Made by a program: the position numbers and the translations under genes
In this document: piece by piece, positions 32,451 to 43,300 of the stretch
How the letters are laid out: each line of letters starts with the position of its first letter
Position numbering within the stretch: the stretch's first letter is position 1
Assembly: GCA_950097015.1 (NCBI GenBank)
Contig: CATNEN010000001.1
Span: 10,478,001-10,542,000 of the forward strand
Reading direction: 5' to 3'
From: Macrostomum hystrix
Lineage: Eukaryota > Animalia > Platyhelminthes
Length of the DNA: 64,000 nt
Notes under the pieces: generated by a model
What the model was told of the DNA's origin: nothing
Seen by the model: the letters and a program-made list of their open reading frames with translations, nothing else
The model's database searches: none

Positions 32451-32753
32451 ATGATGATTCGTTTGAGAATCCTTCACGGAGGTCGAGCTGTACTTGTCGA
32501 CTGCCCACCCTGGTTCACAGTGCAACAATTGAAGCATCGAATCCAGACTTTGCACCTGTTTCAGGAGAGCTTATATGAATTGGAGATGAAGCTTATTTAC
32601 AAGGCTGAAGTCCTGCAGGACACCAGCTCACTATACGCGTGCGGTGTCACCGACAATGACGTCATAGTGCTCATCAACGTCAAGGAGGAAGAGCGGCTGC
32701 GAAAGATTATCCAGGATCGAGTGAGGACATTGAGAATTCGGCCTGACAAGTGA
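32451..32753 (+). CDS. Ubiquitin-like domain protein (100 aa, single exon, no C-terminal di-Gly)
   Basis: Beta-grasp pattern TVQQLKHRI...KLIYKAEVLQDTSSLYACGVTDNDVIVL, followed by a short charged helix. AATAAA at ~32863. Confidence 0.75.
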   Translation: MMIRLRILHGGRAVLVDCPPWFTVQQLKHRIQTLHLFQESLYELEMKLIYKAEVLQDTSSLYACGVTDNDVIVLINVKEEERLRKIIQDRVRTLRIRPDK

Positions 32754-32929: not shown

Positions 32930-33565
32930 TACTTATCCATTACTCAGTCTACTTTTCCATACACCAATGTACTTTTCCATAACCCAGTCTACTTTTCCAT
33001 ACACCAATGTACTTTTCCATAAACCAATGTACTTTTCCATAAGCCAGTCTACATTTCCATAACCCAGTCTACTTTTCCATAACCCAGTCTACTTTTCAAT
33101 AACCCAGTTTACTTTTCAATAACTCAGTCTACTTTTCAATAACTCAGTCTACTTTTCAATAACCCAGTCTAATTTTACATAACCCAGTCTAATTTTACAT
33201 AACCCAGTCTAATTTTCCATAACCCAGTCTACTTTTCCATAACCCAGTCTACTTTTCCATAACGCAGTCTACTTTTCCATAACCCAGTCTAATTTTACAT
33301 AACCCAGTCTACTTTTCCATAACCCAGTCTACTTTTCGATAACGCAGTCTAATTTTACATAACCCAGTCTACTTTTCCATAACCCAGTCTACTTTTCCAT
33401 AACCCAGTCTACTTTTCCATAACCCAGTCTACTTTTACATAACCCAGTCTACTTTTCCATACCCCAGTCTACTTTTCGATTACGCAGTCTACTTTTCGAT
33501 AACGCAGTCTACTTTTCCATAACCCAGTCTACTTTTACATAACCCAATGTACTTTTCCATAACCA
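32930..33565. repeat. 20-bp minisatellite (AACCCAGTCTACTTTTCCAT), ~31 copies
   Basis: Seen directly. Confidence 0.95.
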
Positions 33566-34036
33566 TTGTCTTGTTCAATGTAAATTGCTACACATTCAAC
33601 TAATCTGACACATTAAATTGTTTTTTAAATTAGTTGCAATTTTCTGCTCCAACGGTCTCTCTAGCATTTTAATTTTTCTTAAAACTCCACCATGCTAGCA
33701 AAACCAACCACTAATTGTCCCGCGTGATAGTATTCAACCTAGCAGATCAGGTTGAATTAACAAAAATCAAATAGTATAGTGACAGGATAGTCAAATATAA
33801 TTTTGGTTTTAGATACACTTTAACTTTACGTGTTTAAAAGCAATTGCTTTAGCTCGGAAGAAAAACTATATTTTTAACAAGTGCAACAAAATACACTTTG
33901 TTATGCTCGCAATTTGTCCTCGGATAGAAATATGATCAGACAGTTTGGTCACAGGCGCAGCAGACAGCACAGCTTGGATAATACCTTAGGCGGTCGATAA
34001 AACAAAATTGCACAGTATAAAAAAATTCGAGTAAAT

Positions 34037-35029
34037 TCAAAGAAAACAACAGCCAGATAAGAATGGATGATCTTTTGATTGTTCTTCCTTGTACTTTTTA
34101 GCAATTCGAGTGGCCAGCAACTGATGCTGTCCGGTGTTGTGCACTAGATTTAGTGACGCTTGATTGACCTCATCCAAGTTTACATTCCGCTGGTGAAGCA
34201 GCTGAAAAATGTTTTTGTTTTGTAAAAAAACAATTAATAACCTTAACCAGTAAACTGAATCACACCTGAGTGACTGAATCACAGCTGATAGAGTGACTGA
34301 ATCACACCTGATAGAGTGACTGAATCACAGCTGATAGAGTGACTGAATCACAGCTGATAGAGGGATTGAATCACAGCTGATAGAGTAACTGGATTTCAAA
34401 TGAGAGTGACTGAATTTCAACTGAGAGTGACTGAATTTCAACTGAGAGTGACTGAATTTCAACTGAGAGTGACTGAATTTCAACTGAGAGTGACTGAATT
34501 TCAGCTGAGAGTGACTGAATTTCAGCTGAGAGTGACTGACTTTCAACTGAGAGTGACTGAATTTCAACTGAGAGTGACTGAATTTCAACTGAGAGTGACT
34601 GAATTTCAGCTGAGAGTGACTGAATTTCAACTGAGAGTGACTGAATTTCAACTGAGAGTGACTGAATTTCAACTGAGAGTGACTGACTTTCAACTGAGAG
34701 TGACTGAATTTCAACTGAGAGTGACTGAATTTCAACTGAGAGTGACTGAATTTCAACTGAGAGTGACTGAATTTCAACTGAGAGTGACTGAATCACAGTA
34801 TACTTGTCAAAGGAATGGCTAGTTGGCTCGAAGGAGAAATCTGTGTACTCACCTTGATATTCACTGACGAAGCGTCTCGGAAAGCGTACGAAAATAAGGT
34901 CCTGTTTGGTGTGCGCCTATCAGGCATAATCACTGGGCCAGTTCTTGGCAGAACAGGTGTGTCAGGTGTTCGAGGTGTGTCACCAGGAGAAGGTTTCTTA
35001 TTGAATGATGACTGCTGACTGCTAGACAT
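34037..35029 (-). CDS. 113-aa tomosyn-like R-SNARE-only protein with a C-terminal CCFL CaaX motif (exons 35029-34853 and 34201-34037)
   Basis: Donor AAG|gtgagt and acceptor ttttcag|CTG join in phase 0. Product ...SVNIK-LLHQRNVNLDEVNQASLNLVHNTGQHQLLATRIAKKYKEEQSKDHPFLSGCCFL aligns without gaps to the neighbouring tomosyn SNARE exon. Confidence 0.7.
34253..34798. repeat. 21/23-bp minisatellite (GAGTGACTGAATTTCAACTGA) filling most of the mini-SNARE gene intron
   Basis: Seen directly. Confidence 0.93.
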
Positions 35030-35496
35030 TCTGACGTTGTTTGATAACTTTCGGTAGCAATTTCATCTCTTGCATCTCAATAAAATCAATCTAATTGCTT
35101 TTATACACGTTTTTACTTTCCTAATCACGTTGAAAAAGTAACTGACGTTGCAGGCAAATTTTTAAGTTTAGAATTTTGTCGTCACATCTGAACATTTGCG
35201 CATGCGTTAATAAGTCAGTTGAAACAAATGATCGTTTCAGATTAAAATATTCATGTGATGCAGACTGTGCATGTCAGAAATTTACAGAGAGCTAAAAATA
35301 GAAGTAAATGAAAAATTTCAGGCGAAATTGACATCTGCACTTTATCGCTTGACCAGGGCGTGCTGGAAAAACCAACAGAACCTGGAACAAAATCTGATAA
35401 CTCACATCAGCTGTTAATAATAAATCTGATGCTTCATAAACCGTCACTTCTAAATTAAAATTTGTAGGAAGGTAGCCTGACACAATCAACTAAATG

Positions 35497-35635
35497 TCGT
35501 TTAAGAGCTGGACTCACGGCTAGAAGGTCAGTGGTTCGAGTCGCGACTGGAACAATTTGTGTCCCGTAGCAAGACAATTAATTCTGCATTGATTCAGTTC
35601 ACCAAGCTGTTCACCCAGCTCGTAAATCGGTGTCG
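35497..35635 (+). mobile_element. Truncated SINE copy (head plus CORE-like part) of the 25-kb family
   Basis: GGACTCACGGCTAGAAGGTCAGTGGTTCGAGTC...TAGCAAGACAATTAATTCTGCATTGATTCAGTTCACC matches 25105-25215. Confidence 0.75.
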
Positions 35636-36465
35636 TCACCCGGTTATTATTACTCGTATTATTATATATTATTAATTAATTAATTGAACTCAATTGAGGA
35701 TCAAAGTTTCCTATTTTCTTAGCAACACAACATGTGCTAAAAAACTGGGAATTTATTATTTTTGTTGAAGTTTTATTTTTTTAAACTTCATTTATAAGAG
35801 CGAAGAAAAAAAGAAAAAAGTTCAATGAGTTAAACAAAATATAGCCTTTTGTTAATATTCGAATGTTTAGGCGCGTATTTGAAAACATGTAGCAACACTG
35901 CCATTAAAACACATAGATACCCGTGCATGCTCAAATGGATAGCTATTATAACAAAAATTATGCCATTGAGTGTGTGGAATGAGAATACAAATTACCAAAA
36001 AACACTAAAAATACATTAAAAAGTCTAAGTTTTAACATAAATAATAAAATATAAACACAAATTGTAATGTTTCAGACTATCTATCACAACAGATTAACAA
36101 AAATATTAGCACGATCTATGCTATAATTATTGGTTGGTGCAATCGGAAAATGTACTGAAAATGACTCATTGAATTAATGGATTGTTTTCGCGATTACCAT
36201 TAAATAAATAAGGAAATAAAATGGTTTATTTTTTCCTACGTCAATGACCACGAGTTAGTTTCTCACTAACTATTTGCGTCAATTAACAGATCAATTTTAT
36301 CGTCTTTAGTTTCTAATATAAAATACTCCGAAACATTTAAATAAATAAAACTAAATAACCAAAAAAACCGATTATATGATAGATTAGTTAGATCAGTTTT
36401 TACTAAGCTAACCCATTTTTGGCATGAAACTAAAACAATGAATTAGCAAGTGTTCCAGAATCGAT

Positions 36466-36530
36466 TATCCAATAGGAATCGAATCCCTGACCTTCAAGTC
36501 GGTAGTACGACTCTTTGGCAACTAGGCAAA
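36466..36530 (-). mobile_element. tRNA-like SINE head remnant
   Basis: Minus strand reads TTGCCTAGTTG...GACTTGAAGGTCAGGGATTCGATTCC, like the SINE heads at 3.9 and 25.1 kb. Confidence 0.55.
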
Positions 36531-37321
36531 AACCCCTTAGTCAACGAATTTAACATTGAAGCCTGAGAAACTCACTGATTTAAGACGTAGAGGAAAAATC
36601 TATAACCAACCAATGGAAAGACCAACGGTGCGTCGTCGGCTATCGAATTGTGAATAAAAACAGTCCATGAAAAAACATCAGTAACTTTTGTTTAAACGGA
36701 AAATAAATGTTTCCTAGAAATATCATTAACGACCGATATTTGGAGGAGTGCATTCGAGTACTCAAATAGCTAAATATCTCTCTAGAATAGGAATATAAAC
36801 TCACACATTAATTCAATATGAGTGGACAATGGACAGACAAAACATCGCTAAAATATTGCATTGAAGGTTGACTGCAGAACACACCAATCTGAATGAGAGT
36901 TTGCTAAAAAGACAGTGGCTAAAAAAATTTAACAGGAGATAAAATTTCCAACGAAGTTTGATTTATGTTTACAACACAACGCTATTATCTAATTCACTGT
37001 GGATTGCAGTAGGTTATAATGATTTTCTAATCTAATTCAATCGAACGGTAATGTTTGTGAGTTAAATTCTTTGTTTTTTTGATTGATTCAAACACAAAAA
37101 ATATTGTTTCGTAGACTATTCACAACAAAATCACAACAAAATCTGTTTAAGCAATAAAGCAATATCAATAACAATATATGTGCTAAAATAGACATCGCTA
37201 GCAAAATTAACAAGATTTTTGTCAATCGAAAATTTAATTTGTTGCGTCACTAATTGCGGCAAGTAAACAGCTATCACTTCCGTTCAGACGTTTATATAAA
37301 CAAGCGACCAGTTGAAAATGA

Positions 37322-40300
37322 TTAAAACTGCCAGAATTTCTTGTCTTTCTGCTTTTGAGCCAGTTGACTGGCCAGATTGCGATATTCCAGCGCAGCCTGC
37401 CGCATGCGCTCCGTCTGCTCGTCCACTTCGCCAAGCTTCTCTCCGCGTTCCAGACCTTTCTATAATGAGTATGACATACATAGCTTATCAGCCTAAGAGA
37501 TTGGAATTCGGCGGGTAAGAGAGCTTGATAACACTCTGGCGGAGTGAGGTGGAGGAGGGTAAGAGAGCTCGATACCACACTGAGAAAATTGAGATGGTGG
37601 GTAAGAGAGTTTGATAACACCCTGGGGGGCTGAGGTGGTGGGCAGTCTCGATAGCACACTGAGGGAGTGAGGTGGTGGGTAAGAGCTTGATAACACTCTG
37701 GGGGAGTGAGGTGGTGGGTTAAAGATATGATAGCACTCTGGTGAGTAAGGAGAAAGCTAAAATAAATTTCAAACTCGCCTGAAGAGCGTTGGCAATCTCG
37801 GAGTTGGCTCCGCTGGCACGGGCTCTAAGAGCTTCCATATTTTGCTGCGGTCCTTGCTTGACGGTGCAAATGCCGGACATGGGCTTGCCAGCAGCCGCTT
37901 CACCGACTTTAAAATTAGGTTCATTTAAAGAATAAATTGAAATGAAGAAGCACGCAAATAGCTCTACTGCAAGTAGACACAACCGACTCACAGATCTGTT
38001 CTCGGTCGATTGGAGGAGTGCTAGCGCTGCCAAATAGATTCTGGTTAAATTTTTCAAACAGACTCTTCTTTGGCGGCTCGGGCAGGTCGCAGGGTGTGTA
38101 CAGATCGGCCAGCATGTCGTTCAAATCGTTGCTTTAAATATAGACCAAGATAAATTGCATTTAAAACCATGGAAAGGCTTAACCCAACTAATCTAGCTAC
38201 CAACCCGCAGATCAAGCTACCATCTCGGATATCTAGCTACCACTCTACTAATCAAGCTACCTTCACACCGATCAAACTTCCACCCCAACTGATCAAGCTA
38301 CCACTCCACCGATCAAGCTACCACCCCACCGATCAAGCTACCACCCCACCGATCAAGCTACCACCCCACCGATCAAGCTACCACCCCACTGATCAAGCTA
38401 CCAGCCACCGATCAAGCTACCACTCTACTGATCAAGCTACCTCTCTACTGATCAAGCTAATAGCCTACTAATCAAGCTACTACTTGCCGATCTAGCCAAA
38501 ACAAAAACGATTCTACGTACTACTATAAGTAGCTTAAGCGTTAAAATAATCAAAACCTGGAGATAACTCACCACATATCACTGCAGATAGTAATTTTTTG
38601 CACTTCACTTGGCGAACAAAAATAAACAGCGTGACCATGGTTGCTGCACTGAAAGGTGCGACCAAATCTGAAAATGGTACGATAAATCCGATATTCAAAA
38701 TTACAATATTATTATAAACAACATTGCCTAAATGAGTTGTTAGTTACAGCTGTATATTTTTATAAAATGATATATTTCGATTAAAAAACAGCTCGACTCT
38801 CGTCTTATTCTTTGAAATAAAAATTAGGGCTACACGAGTTCTGAGTACGCGGAATTCGGGGTTCGTTACATGTTTTATGTTAAAAATATGCATGGGGCTA
38901 TGGCCAGGGACCCATATTCGGGCAATAGTCTATCCGCAACCAGTCAGGAGACCATTCTGCCCATTCCGCTGACTCCTGAGCACACAAAATCACACAGACC
39001 CCCGTACGCAGGCACACATAAACAGGTGTGTACATCTGCCCTAACTTTTCCATCGTGAGATCTACCGTTTCCTTCCTCAACTTCCATCTGTTCCTCATCA
39101 TCTACCGTCTCTCCCTCACCATCTACTATCTCTCCCTCATCATCTACAATCTCTCCCTCATCATCTACCATCTCTCCCTCACCATCTACCAACTCTCCCT
39201 CATCATCTACCATCTCTCCCTCACCATCTACCAACTCTCCCTCACCATCTACCAACTCTCCCTCATCATCTACCAACTCTCCCTCATCATCTACCAACTC
39301 TTCCTCATCATCTACCATCTATCCCTCACCATCCACTATCTCTCCCTCATCATCTACCATCTCTCCCTCACCATCTACCATCTTTCCCTCATTATCTACT
39401 GATTCCCACATTATCTGCCCTTGACCTGAGCTCACAAGCACACAGATACCGTACGCAGGCATACGCTCACACAGGTGTGTACATCTGCCCTGACTTTCTC
39501 ATCGTCAAGCGGTGTACACTGTCACAGTGCCTTGGAGGTAGGCACTCATGAGCGTAAATTGCACGACAAGCCCCCAAAAACTTCTCTCAGCGGCTGCGCC
39601 CCAAATGAATGTTGCATGGCCTCGGTATCGAGGCCTGAAATCTTCGCCAACTAAGCACCGCTTGAAAATTCGGGTTTCACAGAGTTTTCAGTACATGTCA
39701 AAGCAATTTAAAGCAATTTACAAAACCATAAGCCGAAAACAAAATTAAACATATAATTCCTATTGTGTTCTGGCAATCGACAAGCAAACAAAAGGTAGTG
39801 TGAGTTTGAGAACACTTGCAACAGACACGATAGAAGCATAAAGTGATAGACTGAGTGACGAATAGACAAACACCATCGAAATATTATACCAAAATAAAAA
39901 TAAAGTTAAAATAATTGTTCCGACTAACTAAGAGAAAAATATAGTTTTTAACCCAGTGATGACCAGAAAAAAAATTAGGCCATTGCTTTTGAGTACATGT
40001 GAAGCACATAATTAGTTTAAGAGACAATAAGCAAAGCACAATTGATCAATACGCTGAATTGGATCCATCTTCAATACCTGATCAAATAGCTGTCTCTATC
40101 CAAAACACGTCTAAAATAATAGAAGATTTCAATGAAGCACGCTTTCACAATGGCTGTTAGTTTGTTAATACGAGTTTGTACAAAAAATCGACGATGCTGA
40201 CGTCGGACTGCTTTGAAAATTAGTTCATCGTAAAGGGCAGAAAATTTTGATGAATATGGTGGACTTTCACGAAAATCGGTCATTCGGTTTGGGAGCTATC

Positions 40301-43300
40301 GTCAAGTGGGCAGTGGGTATTTGAAATAGCCTGTGGACTTTCTACTGCTAATTAAAACGGCACAAACCTACCTGACATCCACGCTGGGTGCATAGTCGAC
40401 GTCCATCAGCGGTTTTAAACCCGGCAGAGAGTTCACAACAATGTGACCATTGGCTAGGAGGCAGACTAGGCAGGCGTGGCCCCTCACCATGGTAACCGCC
40501 GCCTTAGCAACGCTAGAAGTTTCCGTGAGTTTCTTCTTGGCGCAGCAGGTCAGGGATGGCAGGCTGAGTATTCGGACCTGCTTATCCGAGCAGAGGCTCA
40601 CCAGCTGCGTGTCCTCGGCAGCTGGCGGCGGACTGTACAACAGGCTGACAGCCTGCATGGCGCCAAGCATGCGGATGAGTGTGCCGGATGGAGCAGCAGC
40701 CGCCGCTTGCACTGCCCTGGCCGCTTCCGTTGGCGGCAGTTGCAGCCGGACCGGAAACAGCGAGCCGTGCGAGGTACCAATCCACAGCGTGGGCGTTGGA
40801 TTGGGATCTGGGATCAATTGGGAAGTTTGTTCTCTCAGAATGAGTGCGCGACTTAAGGATAACTGTAATTGCAGGAGGGCTGCGGGCAGTGGCACATCAT
40901 TTGATGACACTAGACCCGCTGCCAGCGAGAAGGCAATTCTGCCCATTTCGCTGACTCCTGAGCACACACGCACACAGATACTGTACGCAGGCACACGCTC
41001 ACACAGGTGTGTACATCTGCCATGACTTTCTCATGGTCAGGCACTGTACACTGTCACTGTGCCTTGGTGTTTGGCCCTCAAGGGCGTAAACTGCACGACA
41101 AGAGCTCAAGCCTACTGTACGTGGCTGCGCCCCAAATGAATGTTGGCCTCGCCGCGGAATCGAGCTCAGGACCATTGGCGAGAGAGGCAAAGAGCTACTC
41201 TGCCACTTCTGCGACAAACACGCAGCCTTCGTGACGAAGCTGTTGACTACGGAGTCTTGTCTACCAACAAACGTCACGAGTGAAACGAAGTCTTGGCTTG
41301 ATAATAACGGGTGCGCTTAATTATGAAGTAATATCTAAAATCGATTCGATTCCGGACTTCACAAAAAAACAATCCATTTAACATGATCTAGAAATTTAAG
41401 ACAAGTCTCACCTATCTTCCTTAGTTGAGCTAGTCCGAATTGCAGCAGGACCACAGCCTCCTTGTTGCAATGCTCAAGACTAGATGTGCTGCTGCTGCAC
41501 GAGCGAGAGAAGTTGTCCGATTTGTCTGAAGGCGATGGGAGAAATACGAACAAAGTGTCAGAAATCGAACTGAGAAACGAACAGGTCGCAATGTCGCCCC
41601 TAGCAACAAGCGCATGTACACACGCAGACAAACAGACACGCACAATGTGATTACAATACTAAACTACCACAAAGATTTGTGCGAACATGTTCATCATAAA
41701 CATCGGCATCGTCTAGATATTCAACGTTTCTCGTCGGGGTTTTTTCTTGTTGTCTTTGTCACCAGGGTTTTCGTCAAGAGTCGCTGAATATCACGACGAA
41801 AGGGCAGAAGATTTTGATTCCGATGGTGGACTTTCGCGAAAATAGGTAATTCGGTTTGGGAGCTATTGTGAAGTTAAGTTGCTAAGGTGGCTTAACAATT
41901 AACAAGATACAGACACACACATAGTTGCTACATAGTTGCATGCAATGTCTTATGCAGCATGTTAATGTGGGAGTTATTTAAACGTTTGAGAATGAAGGAG
42001 TCGGAAGTTGTTGAACAAAGGAAAATGAGGTTGAGAAATATTCGATGACAACTTTGAGATTATATGATAGCAAAAAGCGCTTATAAAAATTCTATTTTAT
42101 AGAAAAAATCTGCAATAGGACAATTAGTTCTTATAAAGAAGATAGCTTTGCTACAACTATAATAACGGTATTGAGAAAACAGGTTACTAAAAATAGTTGA
42201 AAATATTGTGTAAACTATGAGATTGGGTCATTGCAATATTATACTGGTTGTGCAAGTGTAAAATATGTGCGGTAATGTATGAATATACAGACTAGCTCTA
42301 TGCAATGTACCAAAAGGCTAGACAAGTGCAATATAGGCCAGAGAAGTTTGAAAGCATCAGGGAAGTTTAAATGGGTCAGGGAAGTTTAAATGGGTCAGGG
42401 AAGTTTAAATGGGTCAGGGAAGTTTAAATGGGTCAGGGAAGTCAAAATGGGTCAGGGAAGTTTAAATGGGTCAGGGAAGCCAAAATGGGTCAGGGAAGTC
42501 AAATTGGGTCAGGGAAGTCAAATTGGGTCAGGGAAGTCAAAATGGGTCAGGGAAGTCAAAAAGGGTCAGGGAATTTAGAATGGGGCAGGTAAGTGAAAAA
42601 AGATTCCAGATTCTTGCTAAGTTATCAGAAAATAATTTTCGTGTTTAGACAACAGACAATAGCATGGCGTATAAATTTGTCACAAAACAACAAAAATTAT
42701 ACAAAAAAATGTAAGCATGCAAGCTGGGCGGGTGAGTCTACACTTACAATGTGGTAACATCGACTAAATAAAATAACAGAACTTAGCATTTAAATATGAA
42801 CCAAGTAGGTAGTAGCATAGTCGGCAGTGGTATTAAAAATTAAAAGTGAAACTGAAAATAGAATAAATCATGTGTGTTAGGCTACCAAACGAAGAAGAAG
42901 CGGCTGTGTTTGAGCTGCCGGGCCCGCTAGACGGCTCTTCTAAACTACGAACGAAGTGGGACGCGGCGTGCGAATAATTAACCCTAAGGTAGTGCTGCTG
43001 CTGCTGCTGCTGCAGCGGCTGCGGCTGATAATAGCGAGCAACGACGACTTCGCTAGTCTGACCTTGACTGCGGGCCCGCTTCAGTTCGGCTCGGGTGGTG
43101 GCGGCCGAGGCGGCTGCGGCTACGACTGAGCCTCCGGAAGCACTGGACGGATTATCGGAGCGTCGGACGTAGCGGCCGGGAGCTGCTGGAGTAGCTGTGG
43201 GCTGCGGAGGAACCAGCGGCGGCGTTGGCTGCTGCTGCTGCTGCTGCTGCTGAGAGGAGGCCATTGTCGATAGGCACCCGGAGCTGCCGGCGACGCCGTG

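What the first reader, a model, noticed from the sequence alone, without database searches (positions are those of the whole stretch)
34037..35029. 'Mini-tomosyn': a SNARE-only, lipid-anchored microprotein apparently born from tomosyn's last exon
Seen: 2.3 kb downstream of the tomosyn stop, on the same strand, two exons give a 113-aa protein. Exon 2 (LLHQRNVNLDEVNQASLNLVHNTGQHQLLATRIAKKYKE) aligns without gaps to tomosyn's final exon (KGLERGEKLGEVDEQTERMRQAALEYRNLASQLAQKQKD). Nine of 39 positions are identical, including the zero-layer Arg, L-x-E-V and LA-x3-A-x-K-x-K. In both genes the intron is phase 0 and lies exactly four codons before that Arg. The protein ends in SGCCFL rather than tomosyn's KKFWQF. 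Known: tomosyn and amisyn inhibit fusion because their R-SNARE motif has no membrane anchor, while YKT6 is an R-SNARE anchored through a C-terminal di-Cys CaaX. Inference: a partial duplication produced a WD40-less, prenylated (possibly also palmitoylated) R-SNARE that could act as a membrane-tethered decoy or a fusion-competent SNARE. Alternatively, exon 34201-34037 is an alternative last exon of tomosyn, since the phase-0 donor at 37778 fits it, giving a lipid-anchored tomosyn isoform.
Basis: partly seen in the sequence, partly recalled or inferred. Interest (0 to 1): 0.85.

Follow-up and report, generated by a model that had tools for sequence, protein, structure and literature searches.

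The report
Lipid-tailed half-SNARE gene born from tomosyn
Next to the flatworm's tomosyn gene lies a small, expressed, spliced gene whose second exon is an old copy of tomosyn's last exon (half of its SNARE helix) with a lipid-anchor-type tail added, so it may be a new kind of membrane-tethered brake on vesicle fusion, though its translation, lipidation and binding are untested.

Summary
A two-exon, 113-codon frame lies on the minus strand: exon 1 at 35029-34853, exon 2 at 34201-34037. It starts 2.3 kb downstream of a tomosyn gene and ends in SGCCFL. Assembled contigs from three public runs of one study join 34853 to 34201 exactly, so it is a spliced transcript of its own. No tomosyn-to-exon-2 junction was seen.

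Homology of exon 2 to tomosyn's last exon is real. The only non-self hit in the 220-Mb genome is the last exon of a second tomosyn paralogue. That match has 14 of 44 identities without gaps (BLASTP E 2e-4; hhalign 87%, E 4e-6; Smith-Waterman z about 12). The intron position and phase are shared.

Synonymous sites are saturated and non-synonymous sites are not, so the copy is old and its frame has been kept. Only the C-terminal half of the R-SNARE motif was copied (layers 0 to +8, Arg kept). Exon 1 is new, proline-rich and unrelated.

Pfam's Synaptobrevin model does not match exon 2, and no homologue was found elsewhere. The complex prediction gave no verdict.

Best reading: a lineage-restricted, lipid-anchored half-R-SNARE acting as a decoy or clamp. 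Function is inferred, not shown. The scan had no other record of this on other DNA.

The parts
34853..35029 (-). Exon 1 coding part: 59 codons from the ATG (A at -3). It is rich in Pro, Ser and Thr, has four Thr-Pro sites, and resembles no tomosyn exon. The donor is AAG|gtgagt.
   Evidence: It is a single copy in the genome. There is no similarity to tomosyn's penultimate exon. The contigs' loose ends equal its 3' end.
35030..35109 (-). 5' leader of at least 31-80 nt, judged from contig lengths and assumed colinear with the genome. It holds an in-frame stop at 35065-35063, a TATAAAA at 35105-35099, and two upstream ATGs (35075, 35066). Their 17-codon frame ends at 35025-35023, overlapping the main ATG.
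   Evidence: Read from the sequence. The loose ends of 206, 226 and 255 letters are. The true 5' end and any spliced leader were not seen.
34202..34852 (-). Phase-0 GT-AG intron. It is filled by a 21-bp tandem repeat of 24.6 copies at 34268-34793.
   Evidence: The contigs skip it.
34037..34201 (-). Exon 2: 54 codons plus TGA.
   Evidence: It is covered without mismatch by contigs of runs X2, X3 and X4, which then continue into exon 1.
34061..34201 (-). The part homologous to tomosyn's last exon (codons 1-47). It corresponds to the C-terminal half of the R-SNARE helix, layers -1/0 to +8, plus the basic tail up to Pro-Phe.
   Evidence: The ungapped alignment has 14 of 44 identities with tomosyn B. 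hhalign gives 86.8%, E 4.3e-6. AlphaFold2 predicts a helix over residues 2-44.
34187..34189 (-). CGG codon: the Arg that aligns with tomosyn's zero-layer Arg. It is the fifth codon of the exon in all three genes.
34040..34060 (-). Seven extra codons (LSGCCFL) beyond the point where tomosyn stops. The first, TTA, aligns with tomosyn's stop codon (TAA in A, TGA in B). The last four, CCFL (34051-34040), form a CaaX-type box with X = Leu.
   Evidence: DNA alignment A1. Origin by stop loss is an inference. Lipidation was not tested.
33818..34036 (-). 3' untranslated region of at least 219 nt.
   Evidence: The contig ends lie at 33818, 33853 and 33919. No canonical AATAAA was seen.
37322..37459 (-). 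Last exon of the adjacent tomosyn gene (tomosyn A), the parental type of exon. It carries R-SNARE layers 0 to +8 and ends in KKFWQF plus a stop.
   Evidence: Pfam Synaptobrevin E 7.9e-6. An upstream exon of the same gene (40371-40994) matches Lgl_C.
37460..37778 (-). Tomosyn A's last intron: phase 0, GC-AG (CAG|GCGAGT), with 39-42-bp tandem repeats.

Best explanation
This is a real, separately transcribed two-exon gene of a Macrostomum flatworm. The assembly size and contig count match the published M. hystrix genome.

It arose when the last exon of a tomosyn gene, with its splice acceptor, was duplicated at the DNA level downstream of tomosyn. The copy acquired a new, unrelated first exon and promoter region. 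Its reading frame now runs seven codons past the old stop and ends in CCFL.

The predicted 113-residue product has three parts:
- a disordered N-terminal half rich in Pro, Ser and Thr;
- one helix of about 43 residues, corresponding to the membrane-proximal half of tomosyn's R-SNARE motif, with the zero-layer Arg and hydrophobic or small residues at layers +1 to +8;
- a flexible tail with a CaaX-type box. X = Leu suggests geranylgeranylation, and the second Cys could be palmitoylated.

Shown here: the sequence features, the splice junction in RNA-derived contigs, homology to the tomosyn exon, and an old age with the frame retained.

Inferred, not shown: the protein is translated and lipid-anchored, and its half-motif docks onto the C-terminal half of syntaxin/SNAP-25 acceptor complexes. 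It would then act as a membrane-tethered, non-fusogenic decoy or clamp. The closest comparisons are tomosyn's own SNARE helix and the synthetic C-terminal synaptobrevin 'Vc' peptide. It would not act as a fusogenic SNARE.
For: RNA evidence:
- Contigs of runs X2, X3 and X4 cover 33818/33853/33919 to 34203 with no mismatch.
- They continue for 206-255 letters whose first 30 are the exact reverse complement of 34855-34884, the end of exon 1.
- No contig lies on the unique intron sequence or on the unique intergenic stretch 33436-33790.
- Each exon is a single copy in the genome, so an intron-less DNA copy is unlikely.

Homology:
- The six-frame search of the 220-Mb genome with exon 2 gave one non-self hit.
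- That hit is the last exon of a second tomosyn paralogue. It carries a Synaptobrevin match of 30-32 bits.
- Smith-Waterman gives 69 against shuffles of 20 +/- 4. BLASTP gives E 2e-4, 14 of 44 identities, no gaps. hhalign gives 86.8%, E 4.3e-6.
- Against the adjacent tomosyn the score is 42, p 2e-4.
- The best alignments start at the same offset from the exon start, so intron position and phase are shared.
- As a lead only: the three nearest clusters in the protein-language-model search are all Synaptobrevin family.

Coding constraint:
- Against tomosyn B, pS is 0.93 (saturated) and pN is 0.49 (Fisher 8e-6).
- Identities by codon position are 21, 28 and 11 of 47.
- Only 3% of shuffles of exon 2's nucleotides stay stop-free.

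Structure: AlphaFold2 gives a helix over residues 2-44 (pLDDT 82-85 for residues 11-40) and an unstructured tail.

Against: - Pfam Synaptobrevin does not match exon 2 even at E 10. The PDB sequence search finds no SNARE.
- No homologue was found in 1.84 billion representative proteins or by word search. Conservation of the frame, the Arg and the CaaX box in other species is therefore unknown.
- Core-layer positions are not significantly better conserved than surface positions (Fisher p 0.08-0.4).
- The charged surface of tomosyn's helix has been replaced by Asn, His and Gln. There is a Gly in mid-helix and a His at layer +6.
- The N-terminal half of the motif is missing.
- Two upstream ATGs may hinder translation if the leader includes them.
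- The RNA evidence is three contigs from one study whose run type is not on record.
- Part of the pN < pS signal comes from constraint on the tomosyn branch.
- The complex prediction gave no verdict.
Confidence: 0.55

Rival explanations
1. The gene is real, coding and tomosyn-derived, but the helix has been repurposed. It no longer engages Q-SNAREs and serves some other coiled-coil or membrane-associated role, for example as a lipid-anchored adaptor with a phospho-regulated disordered N-terminus.
For: The surface residues are almost all changed, and the Synaptobrevin profile does not match. A half motif alone binds weakly in general, which I state from my own knowledge. Exon 1 adds four Thr-Pro sites. 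The complex prediction was not specific (no verdict).
Against: The Arg and every hydrophobic or small layer residue from +1 to +8 remain in register. The nearest matches in the language-model search are all Synaptobrevin family (lead only).
Confidence: 0.25
2. The transcript is real but the reading frame is not translated, or is decaying. Under this reading it is a non-coding RNA that happens to carry a relic of a duplicated tomosyn exon.
For: Two upstream ATGs have a frame that overlaps the main ATG. No homologue is known. There is no family match.
Against: Synonymous sites are saturated, yet the 47-codon alignment has no gap or stop and pN is only 0.49. The acceptor is kept at the homologous position and spliced in phase to an ATG-initiated exon. 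A stop-free frame is rare in shuffles. The main ATG has A at -3 and an in-frame stop 12 codons upstream.
Confidence: 0.12
3. Exon 34201-34037 is mainly an alternative last exon of tomosyn, spliced from the phase-0 donor at 37779. That would give a lipid-anchored full-length tomosyn isoform.
For: The phases are compatible, the strand is the same, and the exon derives from tomosyn's last exon. An origin as a duplicated alternative terminal exon is plausible.
Against: All three contigs that reach 34201 continue into exon 1, not into the tomosyn exon. Tomosyn's own last exon and stop lie in between. Contigs drop rare variants, so a minor isoform is not excluded.
Confidence: 0.05
4. The resemblance to tomosyn is chance between two amphipathic helices, and the gene is an unrelated orphan.
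For: Identity is only 20-32%. BLASTP against the adjacent exon finds nothing. Shuffles do not preserve heptad periodicity.
Against: The only genome-wide non-self hit falls on the other tomosyn's last exon. The exon offset and intron phase are the same, the gene is adjacent and on the same strand, and hhalign gives E 4e-6.
Confidence: 0.03

Closest known systems
Tomosyn (STXBP5 family; the adjacent gene and a paralogue on contig 7)
   Same: Exon 2 is homologous to its last exon. The zero-layer Arg, layers +1 to +8, the basic Lys-Tyr-Lys tail and the intron position are shared. Neither protein has a transmembrane anchor. [quoted passage not shown]
   Different: There are no WD40/Lgl propellers and no N-terminal half of the SNARE motif. 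The charged surface is replaced. The new gene ends in a CaaX-type box, whereas tomosyn is soluble.
Amisyn (STXBP6), a vertebrate decoy SNARE
   Same: Both are small proteins with a tomosyn-like R-SNARE helix at the C-terminus and no transmembrane domain, thought to compete with synaptobrevin. This comparison rests on my own knowledge and the citation list of PMC8377282.
   Different: Amisyn has an N-terminal PH-like domain, a full-length motif and no lipid box. It is restricted to vertebrates. No sequence relationship was tested here.
Ykt6, a lipid-anchored R-SNARE
   Same: It is an R-SNARE anchored through a C-terminal double-Cys prenyl/palmitoyl motif (CCaaX type), which I state from my own knowledge.
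   Different: Ykt6 has a longin domain and a complete, fusogenic SNARE motif. Here the box is CCFL (Cys as a1) on a half motif, and there is no longin domain.
C-terminal synaptobrevin fragment ('Vc peptide', residues 49-96, used in Delta-N acceptor complexes)
   Same: It covers the same part of an R-SNARE motif, roughly layers -2 to +8. It binds the membrane-proximal half of the syntaxin/SNAP-25 complex and controls N-to-C zippering. This rests on my own knowledge.
   Different: It is a laboratory reagent, not a natural gene product, and it is not lipid-anchored.
CCaX tails such as brain Cdc42 (CCIF)
   Same: The first Cys of a CaaX box is prenylated and the adjacent Cys can be palmitoylated. 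This rests on my own knowledge.
   Different: The protein class is different (a GTPase), and modification was not tested here.

Membership tests
R-SNARE / Synaptobrevin (PF00957) | Significant match to the family profile | tested here: not met
   Exon 2 gives no Synaptobrevin hit at E <= 10. Tomosyn A's last exon gives E 7.9e-6 and tomosyn B's gives E 3.5e-7. The genome-wide profile search also did not list exon 2.
R-SNARE / Synaptobrevin (PF00957) | Arg at the zero layer in heptad register | tested here: met
   Arg is the fifth codon of the exon. It aligns with tomosyn's zero-layer Arg without gaps, and L, V, S, L, T, H, A, I follow at +1 to +8.
R-SNARE / Synaptobrevin (PF00957) | Complete motif of 16 layers (-7 to +8) | tested here: not met
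   Layers -7 to -2 fall in exon 1 and would be T, R, S, F, S, N, with a Pro nearby. Exon 1 is unrelated to tomosyn's penultimate exon.
R-SNARE / Synaptobrevin (PF00957) | Forms a parallel four-helix bundle with Qa, Qb and Qc helices | tested here: inconclusive
   The complex prediction with exon-sized pieces of syntaxin-1 and SNAP-25 gave 'no answer'. It is not evidence either way.
Tomosyn / STXBP5 | Two Lgl-type WD40 propellers upstream of the R-SNARE helix | tested here: not met
   The product has 113 residues. Exon 1 has no Pfam match. An in-frame stop lies 12 codons upstream of the ATG.
Tomosyn / STXBP5 | C-terminal helix homologous to the tomosyn R-SNARE | tested here: met
   This applies to the C-terminal half only.
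Ykt6-type lipid-anchored R-SNARE | N-terminal longin domain | tested here: not met
   Exon 1 has no domain match and is of low complexity.
CaaX-prenylated proteins | Cys at the fourth position from the end, followed by two mostly aliphatic or aromatic residues and a specificity residue | tested here: met
   The terminal four residues are C-C-F-L. This is a pattern match only. X = Leu points to GGTase-I by general knowledge.
CaaX-prenylated proteins | Actual prenylation and membrane association | not testable with these tools
   This needs an enzyme assay or a labelling experiment.

The most novel reading that the evidence does not exclude
A flatworm lineage made a new regulator of membrane fusion from spare parts. 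These were a duplicated last exon of tomosyn, a first exon recruited from non-coding DNA, and a lipid-anchor box created by losing the stop codon. The product would be a natural, membrane-tethered 'half R-SNARE'. It would occupy only the membrane-proximal half of syntaxin/SNAP-25 complexes and so gate the last steps of zippering. That would make it a second invertebrate decoy SNARE and the first lipid-anchored one of the tomosyn type.
Probability: 0.3. Interest if true: 0.75.

Novelty: new variant of a known kind. Interest (0 to 1): 0.6.

Why it matters
[quoted passage not shown] A lipid-anchored, propeller-less half-SNARE derived from it would be a new architecture among SNARE regulators. It would also be a natural counterpart of the C-terminal synaptobrevin peptides used to dissect zippering.

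It is a compact case of new-gene birth, in which each step leaves a trace in the sequence:
- duplication of one exon;
- recruitment of a new first exon;
- extension past the old stop to create a targeting signal.

Macrostomum species can be studied by RNAi and transgenesis, so the idea can be tested directly.

If the protein is not made, or does not bind SNAREs, the finding reduces to a lineage-specific orphan transcript with an interesting pedigree.

Tried and rejected
Reads and contigs:
- As a result, exon 1, the 5' end and a possible 37779>34201 junction could not be inspected directly.
Synteny in M. lignano or other relatives could not be fetched.

Homologue searches that found nothing:
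- Word-based homologue searches with exon 2 and exon 1.
- HMMER of exon 2 against 1.84 billion representatives.
- PDB sequence search, which gave only a chance hit at E 1.8.
- BLASTP of exon 2 against the adjacent tomosyn exon. Its word seeding missed an alignment that Smith-Waterman scores at 42.

Other negative or unusable results:
- The first shuffle script used a wrong frame for tomosyn. This was corrected.
- Preferential conservation of core layers over surface positions was not significant, so I do not use it.
- A relic copy downstream of the second tomosyn was sought in about 15 kb and not found. Only dispersed repeats matched.
- Nucleotide similarity beyond tomosyn's stop codon is weak, and it is not expected to survive with synonymous sites saturated. 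The stop-loss origin of the tail therefore rests on position only.

Complex prediction:
- The chains were exon 2, the syntaxin-1 C-half exon, the SNAP-25 SN1 C-half exon and the SN2 last exon.
- The verdict was 'no answer': score 0.49, controls 0.00, 0.00 and 0.41.
- It is evidence neither for nor against binding.

Joined protein:
- The joined 113-residue protein was never searched or folded.
- In one search a script concatenated the two exons' nucleotides in memory to estimate how often a shuffle stays stop-free (0.3%). That sequence was not printed, saved or searched.

Complexin and G-gamma were considered from memory as other small CaaX proteins. They were dropped because no profile match appeared.

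Full report
**What is there**

On the minus strand an ATG at 35029 opens a 59-codon exon that ends AAG|gtgagt at 34853. A second exon runs from 34201 (after ttttcag|) for 54 codons to a TGA at 34039-34037. The 651-bp intron is phase 0 and is filled by a 21-bp tandem repeat of 24.6 copies. The frame ends in SGCCFL.

Upstream on the same strand, 2.3 kb away, a tomosyn gene ends. Its last exon (37459-37322) matches Pfam Synaptobrevin at E 7.9e-6. An upstream exon (40371-40994) matches Lgl_C. Tomosyn's last intron is also phase 0 and lies four codons before the zero-layer Arg. Its donor is GC, not GT.

**Organism**

A neighbouring ubiquitin-like ORF (32451-32750, plus strand) is 72% identical to a Macrostomum lignano protein. 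The window's assembly has 220,453,370 bases in 42 contigs. The published M. hystrix assembly is described as about 220 Mb in 42 contigs (PMC10468722). I take the window to be M. hystrix or something very close to it.

**Is it expressed and spliced as proposed?**

The run search listed four runs of one study that hold about 45% of the words of 33800-38200.

- In each of runs X2, X3 and X4 one contig covers the 3' UTR and exon 2 without a single mismatch (from 33818, 33853 and 33919 up to 34203).
- Each contig then runs on for 255, 226 and 206 letters that do not lie on the stretch.
- The first 30 of those letters are the exact reverse complement of 34855-34884, the end of exon 1. The two ambiguous letters are the AG shared by the end of exon 1 and the acceptor.
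- The junction 34853>34201 therefore exists.
- No contig lies on the unique intron sequence or on the unique intergenic sequence 33436-33790, whereas the neighbouring ubiquitin-like gene is covered.
- Both exons are single copy in the genome.

The contigs are therefore RNA-derived, although the runs' type is not on record. None of them joins exon 2 to tomosyn.

**Is exon 2 related to tomosyn's last exon?**

BLASTP against the adjacent exon finds nothing. That is a seeding failure, because Smith-Waterman gives 42 against 20 +/- 4 for shuffles (p about 2e-4).

The decisive result came from the genome.

- The six-frame search with exon 2 returned exactly one non-self place, on contig 7.
- That place is the last exon of a second tomosyn paralogue, here called tomosyn B. 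It has a Synaptobrevin match of 30-32 bits.
- Against that exon, exon 2 aligns without gaps over 44 residues with 14 identities: Smith-Waterman 69 (z about 12), BLASTP E 2e-4, hhalign probability 86.8% and E 4.3e-6.
- The alignment begins at the same offset from the exon start in all three genes, so the acceptor and intron phase are homologous.
- As an independent lead only, the three nearest clusters in the protein-language-model search are all Synaptobrevin family.

I regard homology as established. The shared intron shows that this was a DNA-level duplication, not a retrocopy.

**What was copied and what is new**

Exon 1 has no similarity to tomosyn's penultimate exon (p 0.77) and no Pfam match. 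In SNARE register its residues at layers -7 to -2 would be T, R, S, F, S, N, with a proline nearby. Only layers -1/0 to +8 are tomosyn-derived:

| Gene | Residues at layers 0 to +8 |
|---|---|
| This gene | R, L, V, S, L, T, H, A, I |
| Tomosyn A | R, L, V, T, M, A, Y, A, L |

. The pattern is kept, but layer positions are not significantly better conserved than surface ones. The surface has changed from Glu/Lys/Arg to Asn/His/Gln.

The alignment runs to tomosyn B's terminal Pro-Phe. The next codon is TTA where tomosyn has TAA or TGA, and seven codons (LSGCCFL) follow. The simplest origin is loss of the stop codon. With synonymous sites saturated, this cannot be supported by similarity in the former UTR.

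AlphaFold2 predicts one helix over residues 2-44 of exon 2 (pLDDT 82-85 for residues 11-40) and a loose tail.

**Age and constraint**

Against tomosyn B, pS is 0.93 (saturated) and pN is 0.49 (Fisher 8e-6). Identities by codon position are 21, 28 and 11 of 47. For tomosyn A against B the values are pS 0.66 and pN 0.14.

The copy is therefore old, at least comparable to the split of the two tomosyns. Yet it has no indel or stop over 47 codons, keeps its acceptor, and is spliced in phase to an ATG exon. Only 3% of shuffles of exon 2's nucleotides stay stop-free. This argues for a translated, selected frame.

Two caveats apply. Part of the pN < pS signal belongs to the tomosyn branch. Two upstream ATGs (35075, 35066) precede the main ATG if the leader includes them. 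In this genus 10-20% of genes receive a spliced leader (PMC10468722), which could remove them.

**Mechanism**

From general knowledge, C-terminal synaptobrevin fragments bind the membrane-proximal half of the acceptor complex, and lipid-anchored SNAREs are poor fusogens. CaaX boxes ending in Leu are GGTase-I substrates, and a second adjacent Cys can be palmitoylated.

I therefore propose a membrane-tethered, non-fusogenic half-R-SNARE that occupies the C-terminal half of Q-SNARE complexes. This step is inference.

The one complex prediction allowed used exon-sized pieces of syntaxin-1 (L030), SNAP-25 SN1 (L035) and SN2 (L037). It returned 'no answer' and is not used as evidence.

**Limits**

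- No homologue was found in the protein collections.
- No copy lies within about 15 kb downstream of tomosyn B.
- The joined 113-residue model was never searched or folded. All work was done exon by exon. One script concatenated the exons' nucleotides in memory for a shuffle count only.

**Verdict**

The 'SNARE-only' description is corrected to a half motif. The alternative-last-exon reading is unsupported. Function is plausible but untested.

This is a new variant of a known kind: a decoy or lipid-anchored R-SNARE.

Noticed in passing
window 37773-37778 (minus strand): Tomosyn's last intron uses a GC donor (CAG|GCGAGT) rather than GT. The GT four bases further on would break the frame.
   Followed up: partly
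L002 (G000:C7:5443186-5446323), minus strand, 1504-2259: A second tomosyn paralogue lies here. Its last intron is filled with a tandem repeat that stays open in frame (a repeated 'IHPSPSFPAS'-like unit), so a 251-codon ORF runs through the intron into the last exon. This paralogue keeps more ancestral-looking C-terminal residues (KYK...WWPF) than the window's tomosyn.
   Followed up: partly
window 33010-33564 and 34268-34793: Two tandem arrays (20 bp x 27.8 copies and 21 bp x 24.6 copies) flank or fill the new gene. Short contigs on them have depths of 50-190, against about 12 for the exons. A similar array lies near the tomosyn paralogue on contig 7. They appear to be dispersed satellite-like families.
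   Followed up: partly
window 32451-32753 (plus strand): This is a single-exon 100-codon ubiquitin-family ORF (Pfam E 1.9e-6). It converges on the new gene, is covered by a 637-nt contig in run X2, and is 72% identical to an M. lignano hypothetical protein.
   Followed up: partly
L028, L030, L032 (syntaxin-1-like) and L034-L037 (SNAP-25-like): The genome holds three loci each for the syntaxin-1 H3 C-half exon and for SNAP-25. In syntaxin-1, in SNAP-25 SN1 and in both tomosyns an intron lies within a few codons of the zero layer. The C-terminal half of each SNARE helix is therefore a separate exon, an arrangement that makes half-motif duplication easy.
   Followed up: no
window 35023-35075 (minus strand): A 17-codon upstream ORF with two in-frame ATGs has a stop that overlaps the main ATG of the new gene. 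Whether it is in the mature mRNA depends on the unseen 5' end or on spliced-leader addition.
   Followed up: no
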